From Octopus bimaculoides (taxonomy: Eukaryota), in assembly GCF_001194135.2 (NCBI RefSeq), contig NC_068988.1, positions 42,376,000 to 42,439,999 of the forward strand: a stretch of 64,000 nucleotides of DNA, given 5' to 3'. The notes under the pieces are model-generated. The model was not told the origin of the DNA. It did not search any database and worked only from the letters and a program-made list of their open reading frames with translations. The translations under genes were made by a program, and so were the position numbers. Of the stretch, positions 26,523 to 59,354 are shown piece after piece. Numbering within the stretch: the stretch's first letter is position 1; every line of letters starts with the position of its first letter.

Positions 26523-26702
26523 GCTTTGCTAACTGTAGTGACATCAAACAACTGTGAGATCCATGAAGGAACTGTTCTACAAGCAGTACGTACCTGTTAC
26601 AACATCTACTTGGCCAGCAAGAACCTAGTCAACCAGACAACAGCCAAGGCCACGCTCACTCAGATGCTTAATGTTATCTTCTCCAGAATGGAATCCCAAG
26701 CT
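26523..26702 (+). CDS. ARFGEF1: BIG1/2 exon, end of DCB: [60 protein letters not shown]
   Basis: TTTAG acceptor, GCT|GTGAGT donor, 180 nt, phase 0/0, near-identical to the BIG1 consensus. Confidence 0.97.
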
Positions 26703-28772: not shown

Positions 28773-30194
28773 ATATATATGTTAGTGGTTTAGCTGCTGA
28801 GTTAAATGATTGTTAGTTCAAAACTTAGTACTGTAATGTTGTCAAAGAACAAGGCACCTAATTCTGCTTTCTTTAGTTTGTGTAATTGGATAGAAATGGG
28901 TTTTGCAACTACCTCTCTAGCTTAACGATTAGTCATAAGGATGATCCAACAGTAAAAACAATTTACCTGACAAAAAGAAAAACATGAGAGAAAAAAACAT
29001 CTCACCCAGTAATACACACATGTATACAGACATGGACACACTATCATTTATATGCATATAATATTTGGAAGTTTGTTTGGAAGTTAATGTTGGAGAGTAA
29101 TATATATTTTTTTATTTGAAGATGAAACAATCTGTAACTTTAGTGAGTTAGAATACATACACATAGACACGTGTATGCACACACACACACAAACACACAT
29201 GTACTATCTGTACTTGCATATATATGACTATTTTAACATATAGAATCAGTCAACAAATGTTTGCTGTAATAAACTTACCTGACATAACACATACATGCCC
29301 TCTCTTTCTCTCGTGCGCACGCACACAGACATAAAAAGCACATGTAATAGACATAGAAACATAAAAAAGGAAAAAAATTATATACAAATTGAAAATTCAG
29401 AGAATGAACTTGAAAAAAGAGATCGTGCAGGTATTGTTAGTTAATTGGTGGTGGCAGTAGTGGTAGTGGCAGTAGGGTAAAGGAAGTAAAGAAATAAACT
29501 AATGAACTTTGTTCCTTTTTGTCTTCCTTTTTCTCTTCTCTATATAACATGAAATGACACAGTTTAGCTGTATTGAATTTAGGCTAAAACCTTTTAAATG
29601 AATCGTAGCACTTGTTGTACAATCAGAAGAGATAGTTTGACATATTGAAGTATTCTTAAACTGCCAGCTGAGTTTAGAAATGCTACTTCACATTTTTGTT
29701 CACATTCAGTCAATAGAAGAACAAACTTGTGCTTTTCACCATTTTTACTTTTTATTTATTAGTTTTTTTCAGGCTTGGTTATAAGATAATTAATTAGATG
29801 TTAGTTGTGTTAGAAACATGGCATTTAGGAAATCAAAATTTAACCTTTGATGCTGAAATAGGGCTAATTAAAAAAAAAAAAACGACAAAATAAAATGTTG
29901 AAACATCATAAGAATTTATAAACTTTGAGAAAACATGAAATAATTCTGTTTTTGGAATGGTGAAACTTGAAGCAGGTAAAGTTATAAATCATAGATTTTA
30001 AGCTTTTAGCTTTTACTTGTTTCAGTCATTAGACTGCAGCCATGTTGGCACACTACCTTGAAGAAGTTTAGTCAAGTGAATTGACTCCGGTACTTATTTA
30101 TTTATTTTTTTAAGCTTAGTGCCTATCCTATTGGTTTCTTTTTGCCCAGTTACTAAATTATGGGAATGTAAACTCACCAACACCAATTGTAAAG

Positions 30195-30392
30195 CAGTAG
30201 TGGAGGATAAACACAGATACAAAGATGCACACAGGCTTCTTTCAGTTTCCATCTATCAAATCCATTCACAAGGCTTTGGTCAGCCTGAGGTTATAGTCAA
30301 AGACACTTGCTCAAGGTGTCACACAGTGGGACTGAACCTAGAACCATGTGGTTGGGAAGCAAACTTCTTACCATACAGCCACACCTGCACCT
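30195..30392 (-). mobile_element. SINE family B copy
   Basis: Reverse complement of the family B head and body. Confidence 0.7.
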
Positions 30393-32633
30393 ATAGTGTG
30401 TAAATATTAGGTTAAAAATCCTTTTGGATAGTAAAAGTTGAATGCTATTATTTATAGCTTTATTTGCTTCAAGTTTCACCATTCCATAATGTTATGGTTT
30501 GTGTCATAGGTAGATGGGTAGTGTCCATGATTTTATGCATGGGGTCTGAGACTGGTAGGAAGAGGAGGAGTTATTTTCAGCCCAGAAACCTACCTTGAAT
30601 GCTTGCAACAACAGAATGGACTCCACTAAGGACCAAGTGTCAGTGTTAAAGCAGGCGATGGATTAAGTCTACTACACTGGGACAGGTACAGTTTAAGGGC
30701 TTTCCATACTGCTTCTGTTCTCCCGTTTTCACTCAGAATATCTTCTACAATGCTCCAGGGTATTGTAGAAGACATTGATTCAGGGTACCACATAGTAGGG
30801 TTAAGCTGAGAACAACACACTGCAAAGTGAATTTGACAATGTAGTCATGCCTGCTGTTATTGTATATGTATAGCAACTCTGATCCAGCTCTGACCGTCTT
30901 CCCTTTTTTCAGACAGTGTATCTAGGCCTGCAGGGAGTCCATTATATGTTTGTGTGAGAATATTGATATTCCACATTTGTCCCCATTTAAGTGAGATGGT
31001 GATGATGTTAACATTTTTTTGTTGATATTATGATCAGTTGCTCTGCAGTGTCAGATATCTCCATTAATAAAACAAAAAAATATAAGCAGCTACTTGAAAA
31101 ATAGTCAAGGGTTAGCAACAGGAAAAGCACCCAGCTGTTAAATCCTGTCTCATGTATGTCTCCATCTAAATTCTTGCTTGCTTGCTTGGGTAAAAATAAA
31201 ACAAAAGCCAATATTGAATGAATAAATAGATACTATGTAAATTAAAAATCTTAATCATAATAACATACATGGAATGTTTGTTTTAAGTATAAATCACCTT
31301 GATAGCAAACAACCAAGAAAATTGTATTGAGTTTCTCATGAGAAAAGGAACAATATTATCCACAGAAATCTCAGCAAGTAAATCTTTTTTGTTGTACATC
31401 AACATAAAAATTTTGAGTATTTCGTTTGATTGCCTGGAGTGTAACAGGAGTTTTAGTATTCTTAATGAATACTCGTTTGCAACTAACTTAAGTGAATAAC
31501 TAACTAGCTTAAAAGATATTTATAAGCTAAGAACAAATTTTAAGGAAACAACAAATCAGACATTTCTTACATGTTCCAAGCATGAAACAGGACTGGAATT
31601 TATATTGAATTTGAAGTATGAGCAGTTGTGATTCTAAGGGTCTGTTTGTTGTAAGTTCACCATTCAAAGTTTTTGGAAAGTGGTCAAAGTTTAGGATAAA
31701 AAGACTGCTTTTAGTTAAGATCTTGTCCAAACCTAAACTGTAGATGTTTGTCAAGGTTTCTGGTGACAACTCATCTCCTTTGGATTCTTTGAAACAGCCT
31801 GGATTAAAACATATTGTCTTGTCCTCTTTTACAGTTTCACAGCAGTTAGAAATACTTGTAGTGAAAGCTCAAAGAGATATTTCTACCATGTAATGATCCA
31901 CTAACCATCAATACTTACATCATTATTCAGTTCACCTGACATTTGTTACCTCCCTGATGTTGTAATTTTTGTGAATTCGCATTTTATTACAATATCACTT
32001 TCTACATCTGATTTAATTACTTCATCGAAATGTCTTGTTTTAAAACCTCTTTCACATTTTCTACCACTTCTTACCATTCATCATCCTCTCATCTCAATCA
32101 TTCTGTATACTGTCACACACTTGTTCTCTCCTCACCCATCCTAGTTCTTTCACTGCTGTTTTTGTCTATTCAGCTCCTAATTACATAGCAGCTGAGTGAA
32201 TGAACATGTTATAGAGCAGCAAGGACTCTTTAATCACACAAGGTATAAGGCGTTCCTGTTTGTGTTGGTACCACTGTAACAGGAGGACATCGGGTTTAAG
32301 CTGGCTTCTGATTTTAGATTGGCCAATAAAGTATTCTGGTTGCCCATCTGCCAACTTTGTAACAAAATAATAAATTCCTGGCCCATCATTGCTGTGTCTT
32401 GAGTACTATCCATTTGTGTAGAATTTTGTCAATTCCATTAGTGATGTTTGGCTTCATAATGATTTAGTTGGCTGTTAGTATATGCATTAGCATAGCTACT
32501 TAATAGGCTGTTTACTGTTGTTTTGGGTAGCATCAATACCAATTTTCCATATCCTTTGGATTTTCTTTTCAATTGGGTTCTTTTCCCAGCCTTTACAAAC
32601 TACGACTTAGCATATACGGCAAAGTGATGGGAG

Positions 32634-32636
<3 letters not shown>

Positions 32637-32673
<37 letters not shown>
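32637..32673. repeat. (GA)n microsatellite
   Basis: Direct reading. Confidence 0.95.
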
Positions 32674-32676
<3 letters not shown>

Positions 32677-33106
32677 TTTCAGTGACATGATAGCTGTTAG
32701 TAAGGAGATTGTACATGACCATGAAGGTGATTGAACTAGAGTGAGGGGAGAGAAACAGAATGATCAGATTAAGAGAGTAATAGAGTAATGGAAGACAGTT
32801 AGTGAGTGATAGTTATTTGATGATTATGGGACAGGATATTGAGTGGAAGTTGTATGAGTGAGGGAGAAATAAGTGCAAATATAAATATCCAAACTTCATG
32901 GGTACATTCAGTGTCTGCATATTTGGCTCAGAATTTGCTGGGGTTAAAAAGAGAATAACAGTAAAGAGACAAGATGATAAAAGAGGGAGTAATGGGGAAA
33001 AAGAGTGTGTGTGTGTGTCAATAAGAAGTGATAGAGGAGAGTGAATGGTGGATAGCAATAAAGGTAGGTGATACTAAGATATTTGTATATGTATATTGTT
33101 TGCCAG

Positions 33107-33172
33107 GATCAAGAGAAACAGAAAGATAAGCAAGTCCAGAAAACAGAAAGGAAAAGTGAATCTGATTTGGAG
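33107..33172 (+). CDS. ARFGEF1: Duplicated 66-nt linker exon, copy 1: DQEKQKDKQVQKTERKSESDLE
   Basis: TTGTTTGCCAG acceptor, GAG|GTGAGT donor, phase 0/0, open frame, paralogous to three downstream copies. Confidence 0.8.
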
Positions 33173-33759
33173 GTGAGTGTCATGTTTAGGACAGTTGACC
33201 TACTGGAAGGTACTGATTTAATTTAGGATCCCTGCCATTTATAGAAGTATCCTGTCAGGACCACGGCTGTCATACAGGGAAGAAATCTAGCATGATTCTA
33301 ATGTAGTCAAAGATTGTTCATTGAGAAAATAATCTATTTTTATTGAATATTTAATTTTAAATGCTTCAACTCTCTTTTTTTGTTTTGGTTTTTGCACTTG
33401 CTGGGTCTGGAGGAAGTGGCAATGCATATGGACTTTGCAGGCCCTCTTGGACTAGTGAGATTGATGCTATGAATGTTCCTCATGAGCCATTTTAAATTAA
33501 CAGTTGCATGAATGATAATGAGCAGGGTGGGAATTCCTGAGGGCTGATGTTTTGGGAAGGGAGGAATGTGCATCATGAATAGTGTGAGACCGGACTGTTG
33601 GACACTACAAGGATAATGAGCTAAAGAGAGATGAGTAGAATGCTTGAATTGAAGTGACAAGAACCTAATCAACTTTGAGAAGCAAGGGCCATTATCGTAT
33701 CAATAGGATACGAAAAAGCACAGAAGTGATAGAACACCTGTGATCAGGTGGATAAAGCA

Positions 33760-34044
33760 TATCTGTGAGTGGATTTTCCAGGACAAGGCTCATTTTCTAG
33801 GCTGTAGTTTCCAGCTCGGAATTTCTGGAACCACTGTTGATACTGGTTTATGTTTATTGTCCTATCCCTACATTCTGCATTAATATTCCTCACACTTTCC
33901 ATTGTGTTGTTGCCTTTATTGAATTCATCAAGCAAAATATGCTGAATATGCACCTTTGTCACTTCCATTATAGCTTTGAAAAAACAACTGTTAAAATTGA
34001 ACTGCACTTTTCAAAACTTGCACTAAAAATAAGGACAAGGTGTA
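33760..34044 (-). mobile_element. mariner transposon 5' fragment (HTH region)
   Basis: Minus ORF from ATG 33968: MEVTKVHIQHILLDEFNKGNNTMESVRNINAECRDRTININQYQQWFQKFRAGNYSLENEPCPGK, matching the mariner HTH/WFxxF/DEPRxGRP pattern; a probable 5' terminus near TA 34043. Confidence 0.85.
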
Positions 34045-34544
34045 ATTACTACCTGCTTTTATTGCAAGTTGATGCAGGTAGTTTATCCTGTCCCCCTCCG
34101 ACTTGAAGTTCATACAATTGAAAACACTGCATTATTTATGGGATGATCCAATACATGTTATTCTATCAGCCACTTACTACTATATGTAGCTCTCATTTTC
34201 TCATGTACTAGAATGTAGTTGACCTTATTAGCTTCCATGACAGCTATAAATCATTGAGTAGCTTCTTTATAGCTTGAAACTGTTTAATTCAACAACTGGA
34301 CAGATTATATATTACATTACTTATGAAAATATGACCATAATTTGCATGTTTTATTATAGTGATTGGCCTGCCTTACCTATATTTTTATTCTTTTTGCTTA
34401 TTTTTGAATTAGTGTATACAATTTAAATTTTATACACTCTATAAAGTAACTTAAACGTTGCAGCTTGCTTTACAGAACCAGACTGAAATAAATTTTAGTT
34501 TAATTATCATAGAACAACAATTAAATCATGAAGAAATAATAATA

Positions 34545-34675
34545 ATCATCATCATCATCATCATTTAACGTCTGCTTTCCATGCTGGCATGGGTTGGATG
34601 GTTTGTCTAAGGACTGGAGAGCCAGGAGGCTGCACCAAGCCGGGAGGCTGCACCAGCTGGGAGGCTGCACCAATA
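34545..34675 (-). mobile_element. RTE-type 3' end with a short internal tandem (GGAGGCTGCACC x3)
   Basis: (ATC)n + TTTAACGTCTGCTTTCCATGCTGGCATGGGTTGG. Confidence 0.7.
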
Positions 34676-35511
34676 TATTCAAATTTCACTTGGGCAATGA
34701 AATACACAAATAATACACACAGATACAGACACATATGGCTTGACTATTTGACAACTACCAGCATGGATTACATCATTCAGGCCTTCTATCAGATTGCAGA
34801 ATGATCTAGTTGAGAAGCCACCAATAAAATATACATTATGTACAAAAACAGAGGGTACATAATTCACACTATATGAATATATGGTGTTTTTACTGCTAAC
34901 TACTGTACATATCTTTCATTTTTTGATACTAGCATGTAACTAACCTCAAAGATTTAAATTACTGTATTAAGCTACTTGAATAAGTAACTTCTTTCTAGCT
35001 TCAAATTCAACAACTAGACAGAATATTTAATATTGGATTATTCATGAAATTAGAAGCATAACTTGTACATATTTCTTCTATTATCAGCTTGCCTTCCCAT
35101 GTAGTTTAGTTCTTGTTTGTTATTTCTTAAAATGTTGCTTAATTTCGAATTAAGTGAAATAGAATTTAAAATTTAATGTTATGTGTTGCAGTTTGAATTA
35201 CAGGTTCTAAAACTGATCTAAAACGAATTTAAATTTAATTATCGCATAACAACAATAAATAATCAGCTACAATAAAACATGAAATATAATTAAAAATGAT
35301 GAAGCAGTAAGAAAGATTGAGAAATCTTTTTTTTTTAAGCAGACATATCTACATATGCCGTCAAATATTCTATCATCAAAAAAAAGAGGCTCAACTTAAG
35401 GCTCACCAGGAGATTTCCTAGTATCCTAGTGGACCAGCTCAACATTGGTATGTCGTTATCTATGTGTATTTGTATGTCTGTGGGTATATATATACATATA
35501 TAGATATATAA

Positions 35512-35562
<51 letters not shown>

Positions 35563-36830
35563 TGTGTGTGTGTATGTATACATACATATGTGTTTTAGTG
35601 TGTGATGATCATAATATGTCTGCTTTTGCATGCTGGCATAGGTTGGATGCCATTCCACTCTGAGTCAGTTCTTATTTTGTATCTATAGCCTATTTGACTT
35701 ATAGACTACACAATTTGTATGTTGAATATTTTTGTCATAATTTTTACAGCTGGACACCCTTCCTTTGACCAACCACCTTATTGAGTGTCCTTGATGCATT
35801 TTATATCACTAGTACCAGAGATGTTTTCGTTTTTTGCTTCTGGCAGCTAAAGATTTCTCTCAATTGAATGTTGTCTCCAATTTATTTATCAGCAGTAGAA
35901 AGATAGCTTTGCCCCTCAGCAAGACTAAAGATTGTTACCTTATCCCTGCATTGTCCCTGTTTATTCCTTTCTTTCCTGCACTATCCAGTGCAAGAGAGTG
36001 AAAGGAATGAGAGGATGTGTGATAGCTACATGATGGTTATTGGCAAGGGTATTGAATAAAAGCAACATAACCATGAGTGTGACATGAGAGAAAAAGAATC
36101 TAATGGAAAAGGACCAGAGTGGTAAGAGTGAGAGTAATGCAAGAGATGAATTGGCAGAGTTGTTAGAATTACAGTGTTTCTTATAACTGAACTTAAGTCA
36201 CACCAAGGTGAACTTTGCTTCTCATCTCCATAAAAAAACAAAAAGTAAAAGCCCAAGTCTGTTGATCAATTGAATTGTTAGATTGTTAGGCACAGTGTTT
36301 TGAAGTCTGTTCTGACAGCAATGCTTATGATTTCATTGATATCTAAATGTATTGGTTCATGTTGGCAGTTTCTCTTTTAGATAAGCATTAATAATGTGGA
36401 GAGGAGAGACTGGTGTCCAAAGGCAACTGATAGTTTCTTTGCAAAATCTTGCCTGAAGGCTTTGCATACATGTGCAAATGCATGATGGAAGATATATATA
36501 ATAGAAAAGCGAATGAGAATGTGATACACAGCCTTATGACTGTTGTTGGTTATGAAACTGATGAATACAAAATAGCAAGAAGTGAGATTTAACTGCAAAT
36601 ACTTAACATCCAATCCTCTTGGGCACACCTCAACAATTATGTCTGGTTTGGAATTTACTAAGGTGGCATGATGATGGAAGAGAGATTAATAGGAGAGACA
36701 CAAAAGGGTTGGTTGAGAGAGTGATGGTTGTCAATAATGAGCGTTAGAGAAGAGTAATGTGTGAGAATTAAGGAAAGCAACAATGATAGTAGAGGGTAAG
36801 ATATATTTATATGTGTATATTGTTTGCCAG

Positions 36831-36896
36831 GATCAAGAGAAACAGAAAGACAAACAAGTTCAGAAAGCAGAAAAGAAAAGTGAATCTGATTTGGAG
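36831..36896 (+). CDS. ARFGEF1: Duplicated 66-nt linker exon, copy 2: DQEKQKDKQVQKAEKKSESDLE
   Basis: Same acceptor and donor as copy 1; 5 of 66 nt differ (3 synonymous). Confidence 0.8.
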
Positions 36897-37919
36897 GTGA
36901 GTGTCATGTTTAGGACAGTTGACCTGTAGGAAAGTTTTGGCTTCATTTAAGGTTACTAAGTAGTAACCTGTTGGAACCACTGTTATAGGACTTGCAAGAT
37001 CTCAAGCATATTCAGGTGACAATTTTGGACATCATTGCTCATCTGCAGGCACTGTCTTCTCAAGTAAAAGTAAACTGCGGAAAAATTGTTTATTGGAAAA
37101 ATAAACTGTTTTATTGAATTTTCAAAGTTTAAACACTTCAGCCACCCTCATATTTGTATAGTTAATGAAAGGATTGTTTACATCATTCAAATATATATGT
37201 AATATATTCAAATCCTTCTCCTCATGCACATGGGCAGTGAAATACACAGATAACCATAAGACACACCTGGTTACTGTCAGGTGGCAACTATCCATTACAC
37301 TATTCAGGTTCTTCCACTAAGTGTTTGTACAGTGTTTGACATTAAGAAACTGTGCAATAATACAATATACATACATGATTCAAATAGTGTATGTGAAACT
37401 GTAGCCACCACTAACTATGCATATCGCTCACTTTCTGGCATTAGCATGTCACTGTTATTATAGGCTTATATGAACAAGAACAGTACTATACATTAGGCAA
37501 TGTAATCAAACACTTGTAGTAGTAAAATTGGTGGTTTCACAAATAACTTATTCAAAATTTCTTAATCCAATTAAAGACTCATAAACTGAGTAATATAGAG
37601 AGCAATTGAGGTCACTCCTAGAATGAAGAAGGATGATGGATATACATGAAAAGGTTGGGCGTGAGTTTTTGTATGGTGTTATGTCCTGTCACATAATTTG
37701 ATGTGAAATATTTCAAATTTTGCCTGGTAACAGTGATATGCATGATCATAAAACTATGGCTTTCTTGTTTGCAAGCTAATTATACTTTCCAACCGCATTT
37801 TCCAGTTTGTGTAATGATTGTTTGAGGTTCTTGTGTGTAAAAATATGGAAAAGGAGGGTTTCATTGCAGGGCTGGAAGAAGTGCATGCATTTTCGATAAC
37901 TGGGGTGAAGCAGCACACA

Positions 37920-38170
37920 TGTTCAGGCTAGCCTAGTAGCTATGCTGGTATAGGTTGGACAATTTGACTGAAGACTGGCGAACCAGATGGCTGCACCAGG
38001 CTCCAATCTGATCTGGCAGATGCCCTTCCTAATGCCAACCACTCTGAGAGTGTAGTGGGTGCCTTTACGTGCCACCAGCACGAGGGCCAGTCAGGTGGTA
38101 CTGGCAAAGGCCACACTCAAATGGTGTTTTTTACATGCCACCTGCACAGGAGCCAGTCCAGCGGCACTAG
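37920..38170 (-). mobile_element. RTE-type 3' UTR fragment
   Basis: GGCTGCACCAGGCTCCAATCTGATCTGGCAGATGCCCTTCCTAATGCCAACC. Confidence 0.65.
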
Positions 38171-39507
38171 AAAAGCTTTATAGTTTATAGTTTTAAACTG
38201 TTAAATTCAACAAACTAGACAGATTATATTTTATTATTCAAGAAAATATTCTAATTTATCTATTTTTTACTGTAGTAATTAATCTGGCTGTCTTGTATTT
38301 TTGTTCCAATGTATTTCTTAATGTTGCTTATTTTTAAATTATTTAAAATTTAATATGTTCTATTAGATAACTTAAATGTGGCAGCTTACTTTACAGAACT
38401 GAAATTCCAATTGAAACTAGTTTAAATTTGATAATTGTATAACACTAAGCAACCACAAAAAAAATATGATAATTGAAAATTGTGAGGCAGTAAGAAGTGA
38501 ACATATTTACCAATAAATAGTCTACCATTAAAAGAAGGCTCAACTTAAAGAGGCTCACTAAGCAATTTCCCAGTATTTTGATGTACCAGTTTGGTACTGG
38601 TATATAGTTATCAACTTGTATTTGTTTGTAGATATATATACATGTGTGTGTGTGTTTATATATAAATAAATAATAGCTATGTGTATGTAAAAACAGCTAT
38701 ATATGTATCTCATTTTATGCCAGTTTTTACATGCTGGCATGGGTTGGTTGGCATTACAGTTCAAGTCAGTTGTTATTTCAAGTTACTAATTTGCTGGATT
38801 AATCAAAGACTACATTTTTTGTATGTTAAATTTTTTGGACTAATTTCTGAAGCTTTTTGCTTTTCCTATGGTCAACTACCTTATTGTATGTCCTTGGTGA
38901 ATTTATTATGATACAAGCTCTAGAAAGGTTGTCTTGTCCTGGAAAGATTAAAGAGTTCTCTCTACATAATGTTTATTAACATCAGAGTCAGCTCTTTCCT
39001 GTATTGTCTCTGCTTATTCTTCTCTTTCCTGCATGAGTAGATGAGACTGAATCTAGAGCTAGAGGGTAATAGAATACAGTGAATGAGTAACAGCTTTATG
39101 ATGGTTGTTGGTAAGGATATTGAATAGAAGCATCATTGTTGTGAGGGTGATAAGAAGAAAGGATAATGGAAGAGAATCAAAATGGTGTGAGTGAGAGTAT
39201 TAGAAAAAAGAATGAAAGAATGATAGTTAACCTCTTCATGGTTTTTGGTCAGAAAATTAGCTACAAACAACTCAAAAGAATGAGTTTTAAATGTAACTAT
39301 TTAACATCCTATCTTCTTACGTACATCTACAATTGTATGTTTGGTATACAATTAGATAAGGTGGTAGAAGAAAAGTGACAGTCATCAGAGAGAGAGAGAG
39401 AGAGTGAGTGGTGGTTGTCAGTAATGAGTGATAGAGGAAAAAGTCATTTCAGAGTGTTGGATAGTAATAAAGGTAGATGATAGTAAGATATGTATATTAT
39501 TTACTAG

Positions 39508-39573
39508 GCTCAAGAGAAACAGAAAAATAAACAAATCTTGAAAACAGAAAAGAAAAGTGAATCTGATTCAGAA
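39508..39573 (+). CDS. ARFGEF1: Duplicated 66-nt linker exon, copy 3: AQEKQKNKQILKTEKKSESDSE
   Basis: ATTTACTAG acceptor and GAA|GTGAGT donor (both weaker), open frame; 6 of 66 nt differ from copy 4. Confidence 0.7.
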
Positions 39574-40669
39574 GTGAGTGTCATGTTTAGGACAGTTGAC
39601 TTATAGGAAACTGCTGGTTTTAGGATCACTATTCTTTATAAAGAAGTAACCTGATAGAACAACTATCATAGAGAGGTCATCTTGTAAAATACATCTGATA
39701 AGGTCAGAGGACATTTTTGAACTTCTCTCATTTTTCGTGGTGTCTCTTGCGTGTATAGTGCTCAGGTACATTACTAAGTGTCAGAAAAGGTTAAAAAAGG
39801 GACAGAAAGGATACATGAAGTCAAGAAGGCATCAATGAAGGGTAGATGTTCACAGTACACAGAATAAAAGACAAAAAGATAAAAAAGGAACATAAAGAGG
39901 AAAGCATGCATAGGTATATCAAGAATGATGTTGAATTTCCAGAAGCATTGAGTTTTGAAGGATGAAGTGTACTGAGAGCTGGTAACTGACATGAACTATT
40001 TCACTCCATGTGTCAACAATTCTGAGTGCTCATGGGTGCTGCTCTGTTTTTTGTTTTGTTCAAATTTTTTAAAGTATATTCACAAATTGTGAAGGTATTG
40101 AATTCAAAATGGTAGCCAAAATTGTTTATTGAAAAAAAATGAACTATTTTTATTGAATTTTAAATTTTAAAAACACCTGCTTGAATTTATATTTAATGAA
40201 AGAATCAGTTAAAATATTTGAATATATATACATATATATATTCAAATTCTACTTCTATCATGCACTTAGGCAATGGAATAATAAACAGACATACATGGTT
40301 TGGTTTGTAGGTGACAGCTAAGAAGTTTGACCCTGTTTCCACCAAGACTTTGTAGTATGTTCCACATTGAATAACTACTAATTAAATATACAAGATGTGC
40401 AAAAACACAGCAGATATGATTCAGCCAGTGTGTGTTTGGCTTAGCATTTGGTGAGGTGGCATGAGAAAAGAGAAAGGGAGAGAGTAAGAGACAGGAGGGT
40501 TGGTAGAGAGAGTGATGGTTGTCAATAAGTGTTAGAGGAGAAAGGGCAATGTGAATGAGTGAGATGGATGCTGATAATGAGAGAGTAAGAGAGAAATGGG
40601 AGAAAATGATGAATAACAATATAGATAGATGATAGTAAGATATATATATGCATGTATATTGTTTGCCAG

Positions 40670-40735
40670 GATCAAGAGAAACAGAAAGATAAACAAATCC
40701 TGAAAACAGAAAAGAAAAGTGAATCTGATTTGGAG
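40670..40735 (+). CDS. ARFGEF1: Duplicated 66-nt linker exon, copy 4: DQEKQKDKQILKTEKKSESDLE
   Basis: TTGTTTGCCAG acceptor, GAG|GTGAGT donor; 4 of 66 nt differ from copy 1. Confidence 0.8.
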
Positions 40736-41848
40736 GTGAGTGTCATGTTTAGGAAAGTTGTCCTATTGGAAAACACTGATTTAATGAAGGATCACTATCA
40801 TTATAGAGAAGTAACTTGGCAGAATAATTGCCTTGTGAGGAAGTCATCTTGCAACATTTCTGACACAGATGGCATTTTTGGATCTCTGTCATCTATTCTG
40901 GTGACACTTGGGGATGCTGTCATCTTTTGTTGTGAACCTTGGGGATGCTGTCTATTATAGTAACTTGTGGGGGCATTGTCATCTGTTATGGTAAAACTTT
41001 ATTTTATGAATCCTGAAGGGACAAAAAGTAAAAGTTGACCTTGATGGGGTTTACACTCAAATTGGAAAGAACTGGAACAAACACCACAAGGCTTTCTTTT
41101 TTTCTTTTTAATGCTGTAGCAATTCTGTTAATCCACGACCATAACAATAATAATGGTCACTCTTACCAATTTTGCTGTCTGAGTTTTTGAAGGAAAGAAT
41201 ATACAAAAAAAAAAGATAAATAAATAAAAATAAAGAAGTTGCATCTATTTGGAATGGATGTATAAATGTAATCTGAGTTCAGGTATGGATTTTGCTATTA
41301 AGTCACAATGAGGAAAAATGATGATTTCAATTTTGCCTGGGATTGGACAATGATGAATGACTTTTAATTAAAGTCACACAGCCACAGAATTGACTGGGAC
41401 TGCAGAGAGATGAATAGTGAAGTTGGTCTCTTGCAGGATTTGAACTTAGAACAAACTGATATCATTAAATACCATAATCTATTATTGTAATTGTTCTGGC
41501 AGTCCACTAGCCTTCATAATCACTAACTAGGTCACAAATTTGAGAGAGAGAAGTTAGAGTTGATAAAACTGCTGGTACATAATTTATCAACTCCTAGCAA
41601 GATGACACGATCCTGGTAGGATTTGAACTTAGAACATGAAAGAAAGCAATGAAGTACAGCCCTGCTTTTTGTTGAACACTTTTCTGGTCTCTCTCAAAAT
41701 TATCCTGACTCTTTAGTTGTCTTGTCCTAAAATGTCCTCAGGTTTTGTTTGGTACTATCTTGGTTTGAAAAGGTGTGAAGAATAAATGAAAAATAGTGGG
41801 GCAAAATATCATGCGTGCAATCCTCTAAATTGTCTTTTGTTTTTGCAG

Positions 41849-41975
41849 GATACAAAAGAATCCAGTCCTGTATCACCAGATAACAAGGAGAACTGTGCAG
41901 AGTCACCAGCTCCAGATAAAGAAACTGGATCCACACCTCTATCAGATGGGAATCAGAAAAGCTTGGAAAATAATT
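41849..41975 (+). CDS. ARFGEF1: BIG1/2 linker exon, 127 nt: DTKESSPVSPDNKENCAESPAPDKETGSTPLSDGNQKSLENN
   Basis: TTTTTGCAG acceptor, T|GTAAGC donor. Phase 0 to 1 supplies the shift needed to reach the downstream exons. S/P/E-rich, likely disordered. Confidence 0.85.
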
Positions 41976-42445: not shown

Positions 42446-42671
42446 GGTGGCGAGATGGCAGAAACGTTAGTGCGCCAGGCGAAATGCTTAGTGGTATTTT
42501 GTCTGCCATTATGTTCTGAGTTCAAATTCCGCCGAGGTCGACTTTGCCTTTCATCCTTTCGGGGTCGATAAATTAAGTACCAGTTACGCACTGGGGTCGA
42601 TGTCATCGACTTAATCCCTTTGTCTGTCCTTGTTTGTCTCCTCTATGTTTAGCCCCTTGTGGGCAATAAAG
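42446..42671 (+). mobile_element. Young SINE family A copy
   Basis: Full core retaining CpGs. Confidence 0.85.
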
Positions 42672-42927
42672 TTCTAAATAATATCAGTACAAGCAGTGCG
42701 ACTTGTTGAATTTATTGACCATAACATCTAACATGCTGAAGGAATGAACTTAAGATGTGACTTGCCTTTTTTTATACAGGCATGGCTATGTGATTAAGAA
42801 GCTCATTTTGTAAACATTTGTTTTTGAGGTTCAGTCCCACGGCATGCCACTTTGGGCAGATGTCTTTAATTATAGGCCTGAGCTGACCAATGCCTTCTGA
42901 GTAAATTTGATAGAAACTGTATGGAAG

Positions 42928-43157
42928 GCGGCGAGCTGGCAGAATCGCTAGCACGCTGGGCAAAATGCTTAGCGGTATTTCGTCTGCCATTACGTTCTGA
43001 GTTCAAATTCCGCCGAGGTCGACTTTGCCTTTCATCCTTTCGGGGTCGATAAATTAAGTACCAGTTACGCACTGGGGTCGATGTCATCGACTTAATCCCT
43101 TTGTCTGTCCTTGTTTGTCCCCTCTATGTTTAGCCCCTTAAGGACAATAAAGAAATA
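42928..43157 (+). mobile_element. Young SINE family A copy with a 16-bp TSD, inserted into a family B SINE
   Basis: AGAAACTGTATGGAAG flanks both sides (42912-42927 and 43158-43173); host SINE B head at 42777-42911. Confidence 0.9.
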
Positions 43158-46000: not shown

Positions 46001-46090
46001 ATGAGACAGAAAAGAGTGAGAAAATAGAAGAAAATGGTAAGGTAATAGCTGAAGCTATACTGAATGACATTCTGGATAAAGTTACAGGAG
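46001..46090 (+). CDS. ARFGEF1: BIG1/2 linker exon, 90 nt: (Y)ETEKSEKIEENGKVIAEAILNDILDKVTG
   Basis: TTTTTAAG acceptor, GAG|GTAAGC donor, phase 1/1. The helix aligns with recalled BIG1 PQDIVQNIVEEMVNIVVG. Confidence 0.85.
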
Positions 46091-54265: not shown

Positions 54266-54434
54266 GTTCAACTAGTCACCGCATATCAGATGACAACCTT
54301 GACAATTGTGCAGATGGAGCAGAGCCTGCTGCAGGTGCATTTGCTCACATTCTACAGAAAGATGCTTTCCTCGTGTTTCGCAGCCTGTGTAAACTTTCCA
54401 TGAAACCCCTTTCTGAGGGGCCACCAGATCCCAA
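54266..54434 (+). CDS. ARFGEF1: BIG1/2 exon, start of HUS region: (G)[55 protein letters not shown](K)
   Basis: CTCTAG acceptor, AA|GTGAGT donor, 169 nt, phase 1 to 2, conserved [19 protein letters not shown]. Missed by the ORF track. Confidence 0.97.
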
Positions 54435-54574
54435 GTGAGTTTTTCTTTCAATAAGAGGTAGACTTGTAAATATATGATAGTTCAATAGATGTATAGTTAG
54501 AAATATTGTAGACTTGCGTACTCAATAAGACCGATACTCTGTAGCACAAGTGTTAAGACCAGTCCCTCTAGTGG

Positions 54575-54800
54575 TGAAAAGCATTCATGGCAGTGCCATG
54601 TAAAAGCACCTGTGCCGCATAAAAGCACCTGTACAATGTCACATAAAAGTGCCCGTGCAGTGCCACATAAAAGCACCCTTGTGGTGTCATGTAAAAGCTC
54701 CCATGTGATACCACGTAAAAACACATTCTGTAAAGTGGTTGACATTCGGAAGGGCATCCAACCATAGAAACCATGCCGAATCAGACTGGAGTCTGATGAT
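54575..54800 (+). mobile_element. RTE-type 3' UTR fragment with AAAAGCACC tandem units
   Basis: About 21-nt units (GTGCC...TAAAAGCACC) then GGAAGGGCATCCAACCATAGAAACCATGCC. Confidence 0.65.
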
Positions 54801-54918
54801 ATCTGAAAAGAAACAGTAATTTTAGCAAAGCATATTAAGCAACACTAACAATAAATCAAAAAACAGAGATAAATAAGCATTTGACGGTTTCATAGATATT
54901 TCAAAATTATGATGCTAG

Positions 54919-55230
<312 letters not shown>

Positions 55231-55469
55231 TAACCTGCTTCATATTATGCATCCTTTATAATTTTCACAAAAGAAAATAGTTCTGTCTGTTAGTTTATTT
55301 CTTGTACAAGTTGTTAGTAACATACTTTTAAAATGTTCTGTTTGGTTATTAGTTGAGCAAACATATTTTACAAGCACAAGGACACAGATTTTAGAGAAGG
55401 CTTTAATTAGTTTTATCAATTACTTAGGTGATACTTATTTCAGCAATTCAGCTAGCTCCCATAATAGTC

Positions 55470-55679
55470 TTTTCTGCTATAGGCACAAGGCCTGGATTTT
55501 GTGGAGAGGGGAACAAGTGATCACATTGACCCCAGTACTCAACTGGTACTTAATTTATTGACCCCCAAAAAGATGAAAGGCAAAGTCAACCTTGGCGGAA
55601 TTTGAACTCAGAACATCATGGCAGACGTAATGCTGTTAAGCATTTCACCTGACGTGCTAACAATTCTGCCAGCTCGCCA
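55470..55679 (-). mobile_element. SINE family A copy, antisense
   Basis: GATGAAAGGCAAAGTCAACCTTGGCGGAATTTGAACTCAGAAC...AATTCTGCCAGCTCGCC. Confidence 0.85.
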
Positions 55680-55799
55680 TAATAATGAAAGCTTCCTTTG
55701 AGGGGATTTGAACTCTAACTGTAAAGAGACATGGTTATTTGCTACAAGGCATTTGTCTACTACTCTACTAATTCTGTTGTCTGTTACTTGTAAAATATA

Positions 55800-56118
55800 A
55801 TAAAAGCACCCATACCAATGCCATGTAAAAAAAGCACCCATGCCGGTGCCACATAGGAAACACCTGTGCCTGAGCCAAAAAAGCACCTGTGCTAGTACCA
55901 TGTAAAAAGCACCTTGCCAGTGCCACATAAAAAGCACCCATGTTGGTGCCATGTAAAAAGCTCTGTAAAGTGGTTAGTGTTAGGAAGGACAACCAGTTGT
56001 AGAAACCATGCCAAAACAGATGATGAGAGCCTGGTGCAGCCCTCTGGCTTGCCAGCTCCTGTGAAATTATCCAGCCCATGCCTGCATGGAAAATGGACAT
56101 TAAATGATGACGATGATG
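55800..56118 (+). mobile_element. RTE-type 3' UTR fragment with AAAAGCACC tandem units and GAT tail
   Basis: Same structure as 1900-2140 and 54575-54800. Confidence 0.7.
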
Positions 56119-56639
56119 TTGATCTTTGCCTGTTCCAAACACTGAACTGTCTAAGGCACGAGTGAATATGTTTTTCTCACAGATAATTATTTCCAGTTTA
56201 GACACAAGTTGTTAGAAGCAAACTAAATGATATCTGACTTCAGTCTTATACGTAAATTGTACGCATACATTGAGTGGAAATAGTCTTGTGAGAAGGTTGT
56301 AAATGATAGGAATAGATAGTGTTAGGATTATTAGGCTGAATCTTTGCATTGTGAAGCTTATGATAAACAAGTGATGTTATCAAGGAAACCAATGGTTGAT
56401 GTATTCAGTTGGTCAGCTCTAGACTCAACCCAGTGACATTATAAATAGTTACTCAAATATTGGGAACAACAGGACCATGCTTTAATGATTGGCTATGTGA
56501 TGCAAATTGTGATCATCTGGGTTTCTTCTGTCCAGTTCACTGAAGAGTATGACTTGGTATGTCCATTGTTTGATGTGGAAATTGTAACAGATATATACTA
56601 GGTGGACTTAGTTTCTTCACCTTCATTTTCACACCCACT

Positions 56640-57022
56640 TTTCCAAGCTTTGCATGGATTAGATTGAGGCAAATTTTCTACAGCCAAATGTCCTTCTTGT
56701 CACCAACCTTCACCTGTTTCCATGCAAGGTAATATTTTCCCCTAGCTTGACATGTTTTACACTGGAGACTGGAAACAAACAACCTTGCTTGTTTGATGTT
56801 GATGCTCATTTACAACCATCACATGATGTCTATACACACATGCACACATATATACATATGATGGACATTTTTCAGTTTCCATCTACAAAATGCACTCAAA
56901 ATGGTTTGGTCAGCTTGGGGCTATGCCAGAAGGTACTTGTCCAAGGTACTGTGAAGTGGAACTGAACCTAAAAGCACACATGTGAGAAGCAAGCTTCTCA
57001 ACTGCACAGCCATTCCTGGGCC
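56640..57022 (-). mobile_element. SINE family B long form
   Basis: Reverse complement of the 8218-8640 structure. Confidence 0.65.
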
Positions 57023-57364
57023 TAGTTTATGTATGCTGATTTTGCTTTCAATAGATTTATTATCGAAGCTTAAAAATTTATGTTGAAGGTCTGCATAATT
57101 GAAGCTGATATTTTTATTTTAATATCTGGGAACATATCAACTGACAGAAGTCTTATTTTTCTCAGTGTTCTTCATTGATTTATTTCCATGTTGGTTTATG
57201 AGGGATAATGTGCACATACACTACCTATATTCAATGTCACATTCACTTGTACCCATGTTCACGCTCTCACACACCTTCACTCGCATATACTCTTTCACTG
57301 ACATACACCCTCTCACTGACATTCATACACACACTTTCTATTATCCTCATGTTTGCACACACTC

Positions 57365-57438
57365 TCCTTCGCTCTCTCAGGTTCACACACACACACACAC
57401 ACACACATACACTCACACACTATCCCCCTCTCAGGTTC

Positions 57439-57473
<35 letters not shown>

Positions 57474-57530
57474 ACACACACTCTCTCAGGTTCCTACACT
57501 CTCTTTCTCAGATTTATACCTTCTCTCCCA
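57365..57530. repeat. Compound repeat CTCTCAGGTTC(CTA)CACAC... x3-4 with (CA)n
   Basis: Direct reading. Confidence 0.8.
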
Positions 57531-57655
57531 TGTTCATTCTGTTTCTCTCACACACACTAGCCCACATTCAAATTCACATACTCGTCTACACATGCCACAC
57601 ATATTAAACACAATACATCTTATAAATGACTATATTCACCCATTTTTTTTTTTAG

Positions 57656-57755
57656 GTCTTCTTTAAAGAAATCTTCCTGTACATTCTCGAAACAACTAGC
57701 AGTTCATTCGAGCACAAGTGGATGGTAATCCAAGCACTAACCAGAATATGTGCTG
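57656..57755 (+). CDS. ARFGEF1: BIG1/2 exon: [33 protein letters not shown]
   Basis: Poly-T + TAG acceptor, G|GTAAGA donor, 100 nt, phase 0 to 1. Confidence 0.97.
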
Positions 57756-58589
57756 GTAAGATCTCCCTTATATTGGAGTTAACTTCATTCAGTAGATTGC
57801 TGTTATTTAGCTCCTGCTTAGTCCTTATTGAGAAAATCTCTGGTCAAAGACTTTACAACTGCAAGCATCACATTTTTTATTCCGACATCGTGCACCTAGA
57901 CTAAATAAGTTGCTTGAAACTTTCATATTCTCTTGATTTGCATCTGGCATGATAACAGGTGTATCACATTTCTCAATAGGTATAAAATTTGTATGACATA
58001 GGTATGTCTTTCAAGGCCTTAATAACTGAGGTCACTAGTTTTATAGCTACTGGAAGTTTACAACCTAATCTGCCCTAAAACCACATGCAGCACTAAGAAG
58101 ATTCATTTGGGACTATCAACCATAGTTTCAGTGCTTCAAGAAAGTGGGAGACATTTATGTTTGTCAAGTAAGGCAATAACCAAAAGGATGGGATACAAAG
58201 TTAACCTCAGCAGGATTTGCACACAGAACATACAGGGCTGGCATTAAGTACTTCCAAGCATTTGAAGGGGTTTAAGCTTCTATTTTTAGCAGGGCAAACA
58301 ATGCATAGGGTCTCCCTGTTGTCATCTTTAAGGAACTTTTGCTAAGATCTCTTCCAAACACTGCCTTGAGGAAAATGTCAGATATTTTATTAAATCTTTT
58401 CAAAATCCTATCTTAAGAAATGACAGGGTCAGTGTGATTCATGAGAAACATGGTCACAAAAGGGTTTAAAAACTACCACTCTTGTACCTACCTGGTTGCT
58501 GTCATTATCAGTCTTTACTCATCCGTCTGATTGAACATATGTATGATCAAAGGTGTTCTATTCATAATCATCTCTTTTTTCACTGACAT

Positions 58590-58740
58590 ATGGCGTTAGG
58601 AAAGGCATCCAGCTGTAGAAACTTTGCCAGATCAGATTGGAGCCTGGTGCAGCCTTCTGGCTCACTAGTCCTCAGTCAAACCGTCCAATCCATGCCAGCA
58701 TGGAAAACGGACGTTAAACAATGATGATGATGATGATGAT
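58590..58740 (+). mobile_element. Well-preserved RTE-type 3' end with (GAT)n tail
   Basis: TGGCGTTAGGAAAGGCATCCAGCTGTAGAAAC...CCATGCCAGCATGGAAAACGGACGTTAAACAATGATGATGATG. Confidence 0.8.
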
Positions 58741-59231
58741 TCACTTTTTTTTAAAGATACTTTGTGTGATTTGATGGAGATTTGGTTGATATTTCTAAAA
58801 GCTTTTATGGTTGTGATCAGTCATAAAATGAACTGACACTGAAACAGTATTGGTGTCATAATATTTTTTGATAACATAGGTCTAACCAAATACTTAACAA
58901 ACTAACAAAAGCCTTGTAGCAAGGGTAAATATATAAATGTATGTACTTTGAATAGTGGAAGCAAACTTTCTCTTAAAAAATGGCCTTTGTTAGTTTGTTT
59001 TACATAACAGCACTGATATTGGTTCATGTATAATCAGAAAAACACAAAATCTCATAAGTATTCACCTTCACCTGAATCTTCTAGTTACTACCTACCTATG
59101 ATACGAACATAATATTAGGGGACTGGGGCATATATTTTCAGCTTTCTAGTTGTTGTCATGATTGTCCTTGCATGGTGTTCTTTACCAAATAAATGAATAA
59201 AGTTAATATGAAATGTAATTTCTCTTTTCAG

Positions 59232-59354
59232 ATGCCCAGTGTGTGGTGGACATCTATTTAAATTATGACTGTGATCTTGCTTTGGCAAACATATTTGAAC
59301 GTTTAATCAATGATTTGTCAAAGATTGCGCAAGGCCGGCAAGCTCTTGAACTTG
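59232..59354 (+). CDS. ARFGEF1: BIG1/2 exon with HUS box: (D)[40 protein letters not shown]
   Basis: TTTTCAG acceptor, G|GTGAGT donor, 123 nt, phase 1/1, NYDCD HUS-box motif. Confidence 0.97.

What the first reader, a model, noticed from the sequence alone, without database searches (positions are those of the whole stretch)
33107..40735. Array of four paralogous 66-nt exons in the DCB-HUS linker of a BIG1/2 Arf-GEF
Seen: four 66-nt, phase-0, stop-free exons, each with AG and GTGAGT borders, encoding DQEKQKDKQVQKTERKSESDLE, DQEKQKDKQVQKAEKKSESDLE, AQEKQKNKQILKTEKKSESDSE and DQEKQKDKQILKTEKKSESDLE. The three pairs counted differ at 4-6 nt with no indels. Any subset keeps the frame between the exons at 26523 and 41849. 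Established: BIG/GBF proteins have a variable linker between DCB and HUS; I recall no such exon array in vertebrate ARFGEF1/2. Inference: either a mutually exclusive cluster (four isoforms) or a length-tunable charged spacer of 0-88 aa. Each unit ends in S-E-S-D-x-E, two overlapping CK2-type S-x-x-D/E sites.
Basis: partly seen in the sequence, partly recalled or inferred. Interest (0 to 1): 0.85.

Follow-up and report, generated by a model that had tools for sequence, protein, structure and literature searches.

The report
Four-copy exon array in Arf-GEF loop
A Golgi trafficking regulator gene (BIG1/2-type Arf-GEF) of a probable mollusc carries four old, selectively maintained tandem copies of a 66-base exon where a scallop has one, so its disordered regulatory loop can hold up to four charged 22-residue repeats; which copies enter the mRNA could not be tested.

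Summary
Four 66-nt, phase-0, stop-free units lie at 33107, 36831, 39508 and 40670 (+ strand). They sit between the last DCB exon (26523-26702) and the next linker exon (41849-41975) of a BIG1/2-type Arf-GEF.

- **They are real, old exons.** Distal intron flanks have decayed to about 45-75% identity. The exons remain 83-94% identical with no indels, and non-synonymous change is well below synonymous change.
- **A 30-nt intron block after each exon is conserved too** (90-97% identity).
- **The unit is ancestral.** It matches the start of the linker in other animals (xQExKQ directly after a conserved phase-0 intron). A scallop has one such exon, so the array is lineage-specific.
- **The window holds exactly four copies.**

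None of the four known ways of enforcing mutual exclusivity shows here. The exons look like small regulated cassette exons, so I favour independent, additive inclusion over a mutually exclusive cluster. The linker is a disordered loop on a single DCB/HUS fold, not a spacer between two domains. This is a new instance of tandem exon duplication, of moderate interest.

The parts
26523..26702 (+). Last DCB-domain exon (180 nt, ...[11 protein letters not shown]). It ends in phase 0 at an intron position conserved across animals.
   Evidence: - Pfam DCB hit.
- tblastn with scallop, insect-like and vertebrate proteins.
- Same 180-nt exon in the scallop locus L001, 15544-15723.
- Many truncated gene models in other animals read through this same donor.
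33107..33172 (+). Unit 1, a 66-nt phase 0-0 exon encoding DQEKQKDKQVQKTERKSESDLE.
   Evidence: Acceptor ...ttgtttgccag, donor GAG|gtgagt.
36831..36896 (+). Unit 2, a 66-nt phase 0-0 exon encoding DQEKQKDKQVQKAEKKSESDLE.
39508..39573 (+). Unit 3, a 66-nt phase 0-0 exon encoding AQEKQKNKQILKTEKKSESDSE. It is the most diverged copy and has the weakest splice signals (tactag acceptor, pyrimidine fraction 0.52, GAA|gtgagt donor).
40670..40735 (+). Unit 4, a 66-nt phase 0-0 exon encoding DQEKQKDKQILKTEKKSESDLE.
33173..33202 (+). Conserved intron block after unit 1: donor plus +7..+30, GTGAGTGTCATGTTTAGGACAGTTGACCT. It contains a UAGG and a GU-rich stretch. Candidate intronic splicing regulatory element.
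   Evidence: - 90-97% pairwise identity, against 60-77% for +31..+100.
- 20 of 24 columns of +7..+30 are invariant, against 26 of 70 for +31..+100 (Fisher P 1e-4).
36897..36926 (+). The same conserved intron block after unit 2.
39574..39603 (+). The same conserved intron block after unit 3.
40736..40765 (+). The same conserved intron block after unit 4, with two substitutions (GGAAAGTTGTCCT).
33067..33106 (+). Conserved 3' splice-site region of unit 1 (-40..-1). The equivalent regions of units 2-4 are 36791-36830, 39468-39507 and 40630-40669. The polypyrimidine tract is short and weak.
   Evidence: - 80-90% identity among copies.
- Pyrimidine fraction 0.52-0.62 and longest pyrimidine run 3, at the bottom of the range among the 15 exons modelled.
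41849..41975 (+). Next linker exon (DTKESSPVSPDNKENCAESPAPDKETGSTPLSDGNQKSLENN). It starts in phase 0.
   Evidence: - Splice sites and frame continuity with exons 46001-46090 and 48843-48950.
- No homologue found in the protein databases.
46001..46090 (+). Linker exon carrying the conserved helix motif ...AEAILNDILDKVTG.
   Evidence: - Frame-consistent model.
- Counterpart VVSNVLEDILDKVTQ in the scallop.
54266..59354 (+). HUS-domain exons: 54266-54434, 54987-55221, 57656-57755 and 59232-59354.
   Evidence: Pfam HUS hit, E 7.7e-57. Exon model.

Best explanation
The ancestral first exon of the DCB-HUS linker of a BIG1/2-type Arf-GEF was amplified in this lineage, by old tandem duplications of about 200-450 bp, into four independent 66-nt exons.

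**Proposed mechanism**
- Each copy kept its own 3' splice site, a consensus GAG|GTGAGT donor and a 30-nt intronic element just downstream.
- The exons are phase 0-0, a multiple of three, and separated by introns of 1.1-3.7 kb. The spliceosome can therefore use them additively.
- The mRNA would carry several copies, possibly all four. Inclusion of each small, purine-rich exon with its weak polypyrimidine tract would depend on exonic enhancers and on the shared intronic element.

**Proposed product**
- A longer disordered loop leaving the end of DCB helix 8.
- The loop would be made of one to four K/E/Q-rich 22-residue repeats.
- Each repeat ends in S-E-S-D-x-E, which holds two CK2-type S-x-x-[DE] motifs.

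**Shown here**
- The exons, their borders and their phases.
- The age of the duplications.
- Purifying selection on the peptide and on the intronic block.
- A single copy in a bivalve.
- No detectable device that would enforce mutual exclusivity.

**Inferred, not shown**
- That more than one copy is spliced into the same mRNA.
- That inclusion is regulated.
- That the serines are phosphorylated.
For: **1. Each copy is under selection.**
- Exons are 83-94% identical with no indels.
- Intron beyond about 40 nt upstream and 30 nt downstream is 45-77% identical and full of gaps.
- Fisher test, exon against +31..+100: P 3e-7.
- pS is 0.10-0.44, similar to intron divergence, and pN is 0.04-0.12.
- About 6 synonymous and 7 non-synonymous events fall on about 10 synonymous and 56 non-synonymous sites (binomial P 0.008).

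**2. The unit is ancestral and needed.**
- Other animals start the linker with xQExKQ straight after the conserved intron:
  - vertebrate BIG1: LQEAKQMEKER;
  - scallop: IQETKQRER.
- HMMER aligns DQE-KQKDKQ with human BIG1 LQEAKQMEKE at the end of the crystallised DCB constructs 5EE5 and 5J5C.
- The scallop has one phase 0-0 exon there (L001 16312-16407).

**3. Nothing enforces exclusivity.**
- The introns are 1.1-6.4 kb.
- All sites are GT-AG with U2-type consensus.
- Exon length is divisible by 3.
- The conserved flanking blocks pair with the rest of the pre-mRNA no better than shuffled versions do (fraction of shuffles at least as good: 0.48, 0.28 and 0.07).
- No stable local fold: z -0.8 to +0.2.

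**4. Cassette-exon profile.**
- The exons are 66 nt and a multiple of three, with conserved flanking intron.
- Their polypyrimidine tracts are at the bottom of the range for the gene, and purine content is 0.73-0.76.
- These are the features reported to separate alternative from constitutive exons (PMC1635713).

**5. Additive use is tolerable.**
- The repeats lie in a disordered linker of about 100 residues that tolerates length change (PMC4764562, PMC4956616).
Against:
- Three protein searches and one exhaustive search found no close relative carrying this linker.
- The selection tests rest on 13 variable sites in four short sequences.
- Short-tract gene conversion could add to the exon and near-flank similarity. 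However, synonymous sites have diverged about as much as the intron has.
- The conserved intronic block would suit a constitutive enhancer, a regulated element, or a selector whose partner I failed to find.
- Tandemly duplicated exons are classically linked to mutually exclusive choice (PMC9013439).
Confidence: 0.5

Rival explanations
1. Mutually exclusive cluster. Exactly one of the four units enters each mRNA, giving four isoforms of equal length that differ at 2-6 residues, chosen by tissue or stage.
For: - The units are tandem homologous exons of identical length and phase with co-duplicated flanking intron, which is the classical setting for mutually exclusive exons (PMC9013439, PMC6071210).
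- A 30-nt block conserved downstream of every unit sits where selector sequences lie in some clusters.
- A 9-nt complement of that block (TGTCCTAAA, about 41724) lies 125 nt upstream of exon 41849.
- The ancestral state is one copy.
Against: - Joint inclusion keeps the frame, so nonsense-mediated decay cannot police it.
- The introns are at least 1.1 kb, so there is no steric block, and every site is U2-type GT-AG.
- The best complementarity of the conserved blocks is no better than that of shuffled blocks. About 1.4 chance 9-mer complements are expected in the 15-kb region.
- The four peptides are nearly the same, with changes such as V/I, K/R, T/A and D/N, so exclusivity would buy little diversity.
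- The segment lies in a disordered loop, not in a fold that needs exactly one copy (PMC4956616).
Confidence: 0.22
2. All four units are constitutive. The gene simply encodes an 88-residue fourfold repeat, with no alternative splicing.
For: - The donors are strong consensus sites, the exons are purine-rich and enhancer-like, and the introns are of ordinary length.
- All four copies are under purifying selection.
- Exon-amplified repeats that are all included are well known, for example the obscurin exons discussed in PMC9013439.
Against: - The polypyrimidine tracts are at the bottom of the range for the gene.
- The exons are very short and a multiple of three.
- An intronic block is conserved more strongly than synonymous sites are. 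This profile fits regulated exons better (PMC1635713).
- This rival overlaps the best explanation and differs only in whether skipping occurs.
Confidence: 0.2
3. Only one copy is a working exon, and the others are intronic relics that happen to stay open.
For: - With 4-11 differences per 66 nt, an open frame is easily kept by chance.
- Unit 3 has the weakest signals and the most amino-acid changes.
Against: - The exon-sized island of conservation, with its sharp edges, is present in every copy, while the flanks have decayed to 45-75% with many indels.
- No copy has an indel or a damaged splice site.
- Substitutions are biased toward synonymous sites, in unit 3 as well (3 of its 6 private changes).
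Confidence: 0.06

Closest known systems
Single-copy first linker exon of BIG1/2 genes in other animals (scallop Ylistrum balloti, GCA_031769215.1 contig JAUZWB010000474.1; human ARFGEF1 residues LQEAKQMEKER...)
   Same: - It occupies the same position, directly after the conserved phase-0 intron that follows ...RMExQA.
- It opens with the same xQExKQ motif, followed by a basic/acidic, serine-containing stretch.
- It is phase 0-0 in the scallop.
   Different: - There is one copy, of 96 nt, in the scallop, against four copies of 66 nt here.
- In the scallop the exon runs on into sequence that here lies in a separate exon.
Mutually exclusive exon clusters born of tandem exon duplication (Dscam exons 4/6/9, 14-3-3zeta, MRP, srp, tropomyosins)
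   Same: Tandem homologous exons of equal length and phase, with co-duplicated intron flanks that carry a conserved element next to each variant.
   Different: - Exon length is divisible by three.
- The introns are long, and all sites are U2-type.
- No docking/selector pairing above chance was found.
- The variants are almost identical and lie in a disordered loop.
- Exclusivity itself is untested.
Exon-amplified repeat regions whose length is set by how many symmetric exons are included (titin PEVK exons, from my own knowledge; obscurin exons, PMC9013439)
   Same: Symmetric, in-frame exons of fixed length, each encoding one repeat of a charged or modular segment. Any number keeps the frame.
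   Different: - There are only four copies, of a 22-residue low-complexity unit.
- The gene is a membrane-traffic regulator, not an elastic or structural protein.
- Variable inclusion has not been shown.

Membership tests
BIG1/2 (Sec7/BIG) large Arf-GEF | N-terminal DCB domain | tested here: met
   PF16213 hit, E 1.2e-23, 84 bits against a cut-off of 25.6. 5EE5 and 5J5C, the human BIG1 DCB structures, match at E 2e-61.
BIG1/2 (Sec7/BIG) large Arf-GEF | HUS domain downstream of a variable linker | tested here: met
   PF12783 hit, E 7.7e-57, covering profile positions 2-161 of 161.
BIG1/2 (Sec7/BIG) large Arf-GEF | Catalytic Sec7 domain and HDS domains | not tested
   The modelled exons stop in the region after HUS at about 61300, and I did not look for Sec7-domain exons in the last 2.7 kb. 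In the scallop locus the neighbouring gene model carries HUS, Sec7, HDS and BIG2_C.
BIG1/2 (Sec7/BIG) large Arf-GEF | BIG rather than GBF subfamily | tested here: met
   All named best hits are brefeldin A-inhibited GEF 1 or 2. The DCB part is 82-92% identical to BIG proteins.
Mutually exclusive exon cluster | Adjacent homologous exons of the same length and phase | tested here: met
   Four 66-nt phase 0-0 exons, 83-94% identical.
Mutually exclusive exon cluster | One and only one exon per transcript (bridging junctions present, joining junctions absent) | not testable with these tools
Mutually exclusive exon cluster | Enforcement by frame shift and nonsense-mediated decay, by steric hindrance, or by U2/U12 incompatibility | tested here: not met
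   Exon length is 66 = 3 x 22. Introns between units are 3658, 2611 and 1096 nt. All sites are AG...GTGAGT.
Mutually exclusive exon cluster | Competing RNA structures (one docking site, a selector by each variant) | tested here: inconclusive
   - Best duplexes of the conserved flanking blocks against 26703-41848 are no better than those of shuffled blocks.
- One 9-nt complement lies near exon 41849 but is within chance.
- No orthologous sequences were available for a covariation test.
Regulated cassette exon | Sequence profile: short, multiple of three, conserved flanking intron, weak polypyrimidine tract (PMC1635713) | tested here: met
   - Each exon is 66 nt.
- The +7..+30 block has 20 of 24 columns invariant among old paralogues.
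- Pyrimidine fraction is 0.52-0.62 against 0.62-0.86 for the other exons.
- The conservation was measured between paralogues, not orthologues.
Regulated cassette exon | Both inclusion and skipping isoforms observed | not testable with these tools
   No RNA data.
CK2-type phosphorylation site | S/T-x-x-D/E motif | tested here: met
   K-S-E-S-D-L/S-E is invariant in all four units: S17 has D at +3 and S19 has E at +3. These codons are also identical at synonymous positions.
CK2-type phosphorylation site | Phosphorylation actually occurs | not testable with these tools
   Needs phosphoproteomics or a kinase assay.

The most novel reading that the evidence does not exclude
The four exons form a combinatorial 'copy-number dial'. 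A shared intronic element next to each donor lets cells include from one to four copies, with up to 15 in-frame combinations. This would set the length, the charge and the number of CK2-type phosphorylation sites (two to eight) of the disordered loop at the DCB/HUS junction of a trans-Golgi Arf-GEF. That would be a lineage-specific way to tune Arf activation or partner binding by exon number. The alternative novel reading is a four-way mutually exclusive cluster in a core trafficking gene.
Probability: 0.25. Interest if true: 0.6.

Novelty: new member of a known kind. Interest (0 to 1): 0.4.

Why it matters
- **An unusual gene for this.** BIG1/2 Arf-GEFs are highly conserved housekeeping regulators of trans-Golgi traffic. 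I found no report of an exon array in their DCB-HUS linker.
- **A structurally interesting site.** The linker leaves the solenoid at the DCB/HUS junction. One structural study proposes that this linker could let the two domains separate (PMC4956616).
- **A testable handle.** If the number of charged, phosphorylatable repeats varies between tissues, it would give a simple, natural way to probe what this loop does.
- **A clean example for splicing research.** Duplicated exons have stayed under selection together with a 30-nt intronic element while the rest of the duplicated segment decayed.
- **If all four are simply constitutive,** this is an ordinary lineage-specific repeat expansion.

Tried and rejected
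- **RNA reads.** I did not try to reach runs by any other route, so read laying was never used.
- **Protein searches for close relatives or isoforms.**
  - A DCB-plus-linker query returned only fragments of 420 aa or less. The best was a scallop protein.
  - A linker-only query scored nothing at E <= 1.
  - The non-repetitive linker exons had 22 word candidates, and none scored.
  - An exhaustive search with exon 41849 gave one unrelated low-complexity hit, P0121.
- **Docking/selector pairing.** Several plausible-looking duplexes appeared (28531, 29799, 41718), but none beat shuffled controls. The first scan timed out.
- **Local RNA structure.** The consensus fold has two apparently compensated pairs among four sequences, but the folds have z-scores near zero. 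I rejected this as unsupported.
- **Extra degenerate copies.** None found.
- **Transposon or opposite-strand gene in the array.** There are no notable ORFs, and the units are not part of the SINE-like family of the window.
- **Database matches.** Rfam gave no hits. Pfam on the linker gave nothing, only Mitofilin at E 4.4.
- **Literature.** No paper links these Arf-GEFs to such an array or to cephalopods.
- **Taxon.** The nearest available relative is a bivalve.

Full report
**1. Observation**

| Unit | Coordinates | Peptide |
|---|---|---|
| 1 | 33107-33172 | DQEKQKDKQVQKTERKSESDLE |
| 2 | 36831-36896 | DQEKQKDKQVQKAEKKSESDLE |
| 3 | 39508-39573 | AQEKQKNKQILKTEKKSESDSE |
| 4 | 40670-40735 | DQEKQKDKQILKTEKKSESDLE |

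- Each unit follows an AG and precedes GTGAGT.
- Pairwise differences are 4-11 nt with no indels. Unit 3 is the outlier.
- A profile of the core finds these four copies (E 1e-47 to 1e-56) and no other in the window. tblastn with the peptides agrees.
- There is no assembly gap between 11986 and 44254.

**2. The gene**

- The + strand carries a BIG1/2-type Arf-GEF.
- The exons at 20725-20871 and 26523-26702 hit Pfam DCB (E 1.2e-23). The preceding exon, 19166-19310, matches the DCB region of BIG proteins by tblastn.
- The exons at 54266-59354 hit Pfam HUS (E 7.7e-57).
- tblastn with a scallop protein, an unnamed transcript-derived protein and an unnamed protein with a vertebrate-type BIG1 linker places the same exon borders.
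- A frame-consistent model joins fifteen exons from 19166 to 61300: the DCB exons, the four units, three further linker exons, the HUS exons and one exon beyond them.
- Exon 26523-26702 ends in phase 0 and exon 41849 starts in phase 0, so any subset of units stays in frame.

**3. The unit is the ancestral start of the linker**

- In other animals the sequence right after ...RMExQA begins xQExKQ.
  - Vertebrate BIG1: LQEAKQMEKERHRQ.
  - BIG2: LQEARELEK.
  - Scallop: IQETKQRERTASKLSTKRDEDRD.
  - An unnamed transcript-derived protein: EQENKQRERSNSK.
- Many truncated gene models read through into the intron exactly after QA, so this phase-0 intron is old.
- HMMER aligns DQE-KQKDKQ with human BIG1 LQEAKQMEKE, at the very end of the crystallised DCB constructs 5EE5 and 5J5C.
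- In the scallop genomic locus (L001):
  - the 180-nt exon is identical in length and phase (15544-15723);
  - a 588-nt intron follows;
  - then comes one phase 0-0 96-nt exon (16312-16407) that opens with the unit-like sequence;
  - no second copy exists.
- The four-copy array is therefore a lineage-specific amplification of an ancestral exon. An mRNA with no unit would lack a motif conserved from molluscs to vertebrates.

**4. Age and selection**

An alignment of the four copies with 350-nt flanks shows homology for about 250 nt upstream and 200 nt downstream, but it decays quickly.

| Region | Pairwise identity |
|---|---|
| -250..-121 | 52-67% |
| -120..-41 | 52-77%, with many gaps |
| -40..-1 | 80-90% |
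| Exon | 83-94%, no gaps |
| +1..+30 | 90-97% |
| +31..+100 | 60-77% |
| Beyond +100 | about 33-64% |

- Invariant columns:
  - exon: 53 of 66;
  - +7..+30: 20 of 24;
  - +31..+100: 26 of 70.
  - Fisher tests against +31..+100 give P 3e-7 for the exon and P 1e-4 for +7..+30.
- Within the exons, pS is 0.10-0.44, comparable with intron divergence, and pN is 0.04-0.12.
- By parsimony there are about 6 synonymous and 7 non-synonymous events on about 10 synonymous and 56 non-synonymous sites (binomial P 0.008).
- Replacements are conservative (V/I, K/R, T/A, D/N, Q/L). K-S-E-S-D is invariant.
- Synonymous sites have diverged about as much as intron, so recent gene conversion does not explain the exon islands.
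- The duplications are old, and all four exons, with a 30-nt block after each donor, have been kept by selection. The counts are small, which limits the strength of this conclusion.

**5. How the exons might be used**

RNA evidence was not obtainable.
- No close relative with this linker exists in the protein collections.

I therefore tested the sequence for the known ways of enforcing mutual exclusivity (listed in PMC5740500).
- **Frame and nonsense-mediated decay:** not applicable, since 66 = 3 x 22.
- **Steric hindrance:** no. The introns are 6404, 3658, 2611, 1096 and 1113 nt.
- **U2/U12 incompatibility:** no. All sites are AG...GTGAGT.
- **Competing RNA structures:**
  - I scanned 26703-41848 with the conserved downstream block and two upstream blocks.
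  - The best duplex energies (-19.9, -17.5 and -17.5 kcal/mol) fall inside the distribution of shuffled blocks (fractions at least as good: 0.48, 0.28 and 0.07).
  - A 9-nt complement (TGTCCTAAA, about 41724) lies 125 nt upstream of exon 41849 and is the best-placed candidate.
  - About 1.4 such matches are expected by chance in the 15-kb region scanned.
- **Local folding:** not better than shuffles, z -0.8 to +0.2. The consensus fold is weak.

The units do have the profile reported for regulated cassette exons (PMC1635713).
- They are short and a multiple of three.
- Their flanking intron is conserved.
- Their polypyrimidine tracts are at the bottom of the range for the gene: pyrimidine fraction 0.52-0.62 and longest pyrimidine run 3, against 0.62-0.86 and 4-14 for the other exons.
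- Their donors are strong, and purine content is 0.73-0.76.

The block GTCATGTTTAGGACAGTTGACC contains a UAGG and a GU-rich stretch. From general knowledge these resemble binding motifs for hnRNP A1-type and CELF-type factors. I could not test this.

**6. Most likely mechanism**

- I favour additive use: more than one unit per mRNA, with inclusion of each small exon dependent on its purine-rich body and on the shared intronic element (confidence about 0.5).
- Of the 0.5, purely constitutive inclusion of all four is a sub-case I cannot separate (about 0.2 on its own terms).
- A strict mutually exclusive cluster remains possible (about 0.2). It lacks any detectable enforcing device, and the four peptides are almost the same, so it would add little diversity.
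- A single working copy with three relics is unlikely (about 0.06), given the exon-shaped conservation in every copy.

**7. Protein context**

- Structures of Sec7 and BIG1 show that DCB and HUS pack into one unit.
- The junction helices project from the solenoid and are joined by a poorly conserved, disordered linker of about 100 residues.
- Part of that linker (helix 9) packs back on the repeat. One study suggests the linker might allow the two domains to separate (PMC4764562, PMC4956616).
- The units begin at the position aligned with the C-terminal end of the crystallised DCB constructs. They precede the conserved ...ILNDILDKVTG exon (46001-46090), which has a scallop counterpart.
- The array thus lengthens the first disordered stretch of a surface loop by 22 to 88 residues. 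It adds K/E/Q-rich segments, each ending in two S-x-x-[DE] motifs.
- 'Spacer' in the sense of setting an inter-domain distance is not the right picture.
- Phosphorylation is an inference from the motif alone.

**8. Comparison and novelty**

- This is a new instance of a known process, tandem exon duplication.
- It resembles mutually exclusive clusters in layout.
- It resembles exon-amplified repeat regions in its symmetry and in its tolerance of any copy number.
- I found no report of such an array in ARFGEF1/2, Sec71 or cephalopod genes.
The closest sequence available to me is a bivalve's.

**9. Verdict**

- Observation: confirmed.
- Interpretation: partly supported.
- Interest: moderate (0.4). 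It is a clean, selected, lineage-specific exon array with a conserved intronic element in a core trafficking gene.
- Its splicing behaviour, which is what would make it remarkable, remains untested.

Noticed in passing
window 4337-4587, 12677-13157, 25700-25947, 26167-26415, 42446-42671, 42927-43152, 52786-53004, 55461-55690: An interspersed SINE-like repeat family of about 230-250 nt, with at least 10 copies in both orientations at 75-87% identity. The 93%-identical pair at 42446 and 42927, reported as a direct repeat, belongs to it. One copy ends about 110 nt upstream of exon 26523. The 66-nt units are not part of this family.
   Followed up: partly
window 41718-41741: TGTCTTGTCCTAAAATGTCCTCAG, 110-130 nt upstream of exon 41849, contains a 9-nt exact complement (TGTCCTAAA) of the conserved block that follows each unit. 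The duplex energy is about -21 to -22 kcal/mol with units 1-3 and -15.5 with unit 4. This is within chance by the shuffle test, but the position is right for a docking site.
   Followed up: partly
window 46001-46090; L001 17676-17771: This linker exon carries a motif conserved across animals (AEAILNDILDKVTG here, VVSNVLEDILDKVTQ in the scallop, IVQSIVEEMVD in vertebrates). It is probably the linker helix that packs on the solenoid in the Sec7 structure (PMC4764562).
   Followed up: partly
window 41849-41975, 46001-46090, 48843-48950: The non-repetitive linker exons have no detectable homologue in 5.8 billion clustered proteins, nor in the 1.84 billion representatives. Either the lineage is absent from those collections or its linker is highly diverged.
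   Followed up: yes
window 44179-44341: A (TC)n microsatellite of about 160 nt surrounds a 10-N gap (44255-44264). Other N runs lie at 3651-4148, 10614-10849, 11976-11985, 51108-51557 and 53843-53973, which fits a scaffolded short-read assembly.
   Followed up: no
window 1-19165: The first coding exon of the gene (MFLTRALEKIL... in relatives) was not found upstream of exon 19166. It may lie beyond the window or inside an N run.
   Followed up: partly
output: The word-indexed protein search returned only proteins of 420 aa or less, although full-length BIG1/2 proteins of about 1800 aa are common. Candidate selection seems to favour short sequences, so the absence of long annotated proteins from its list is weak evidence.
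   Followed up: no
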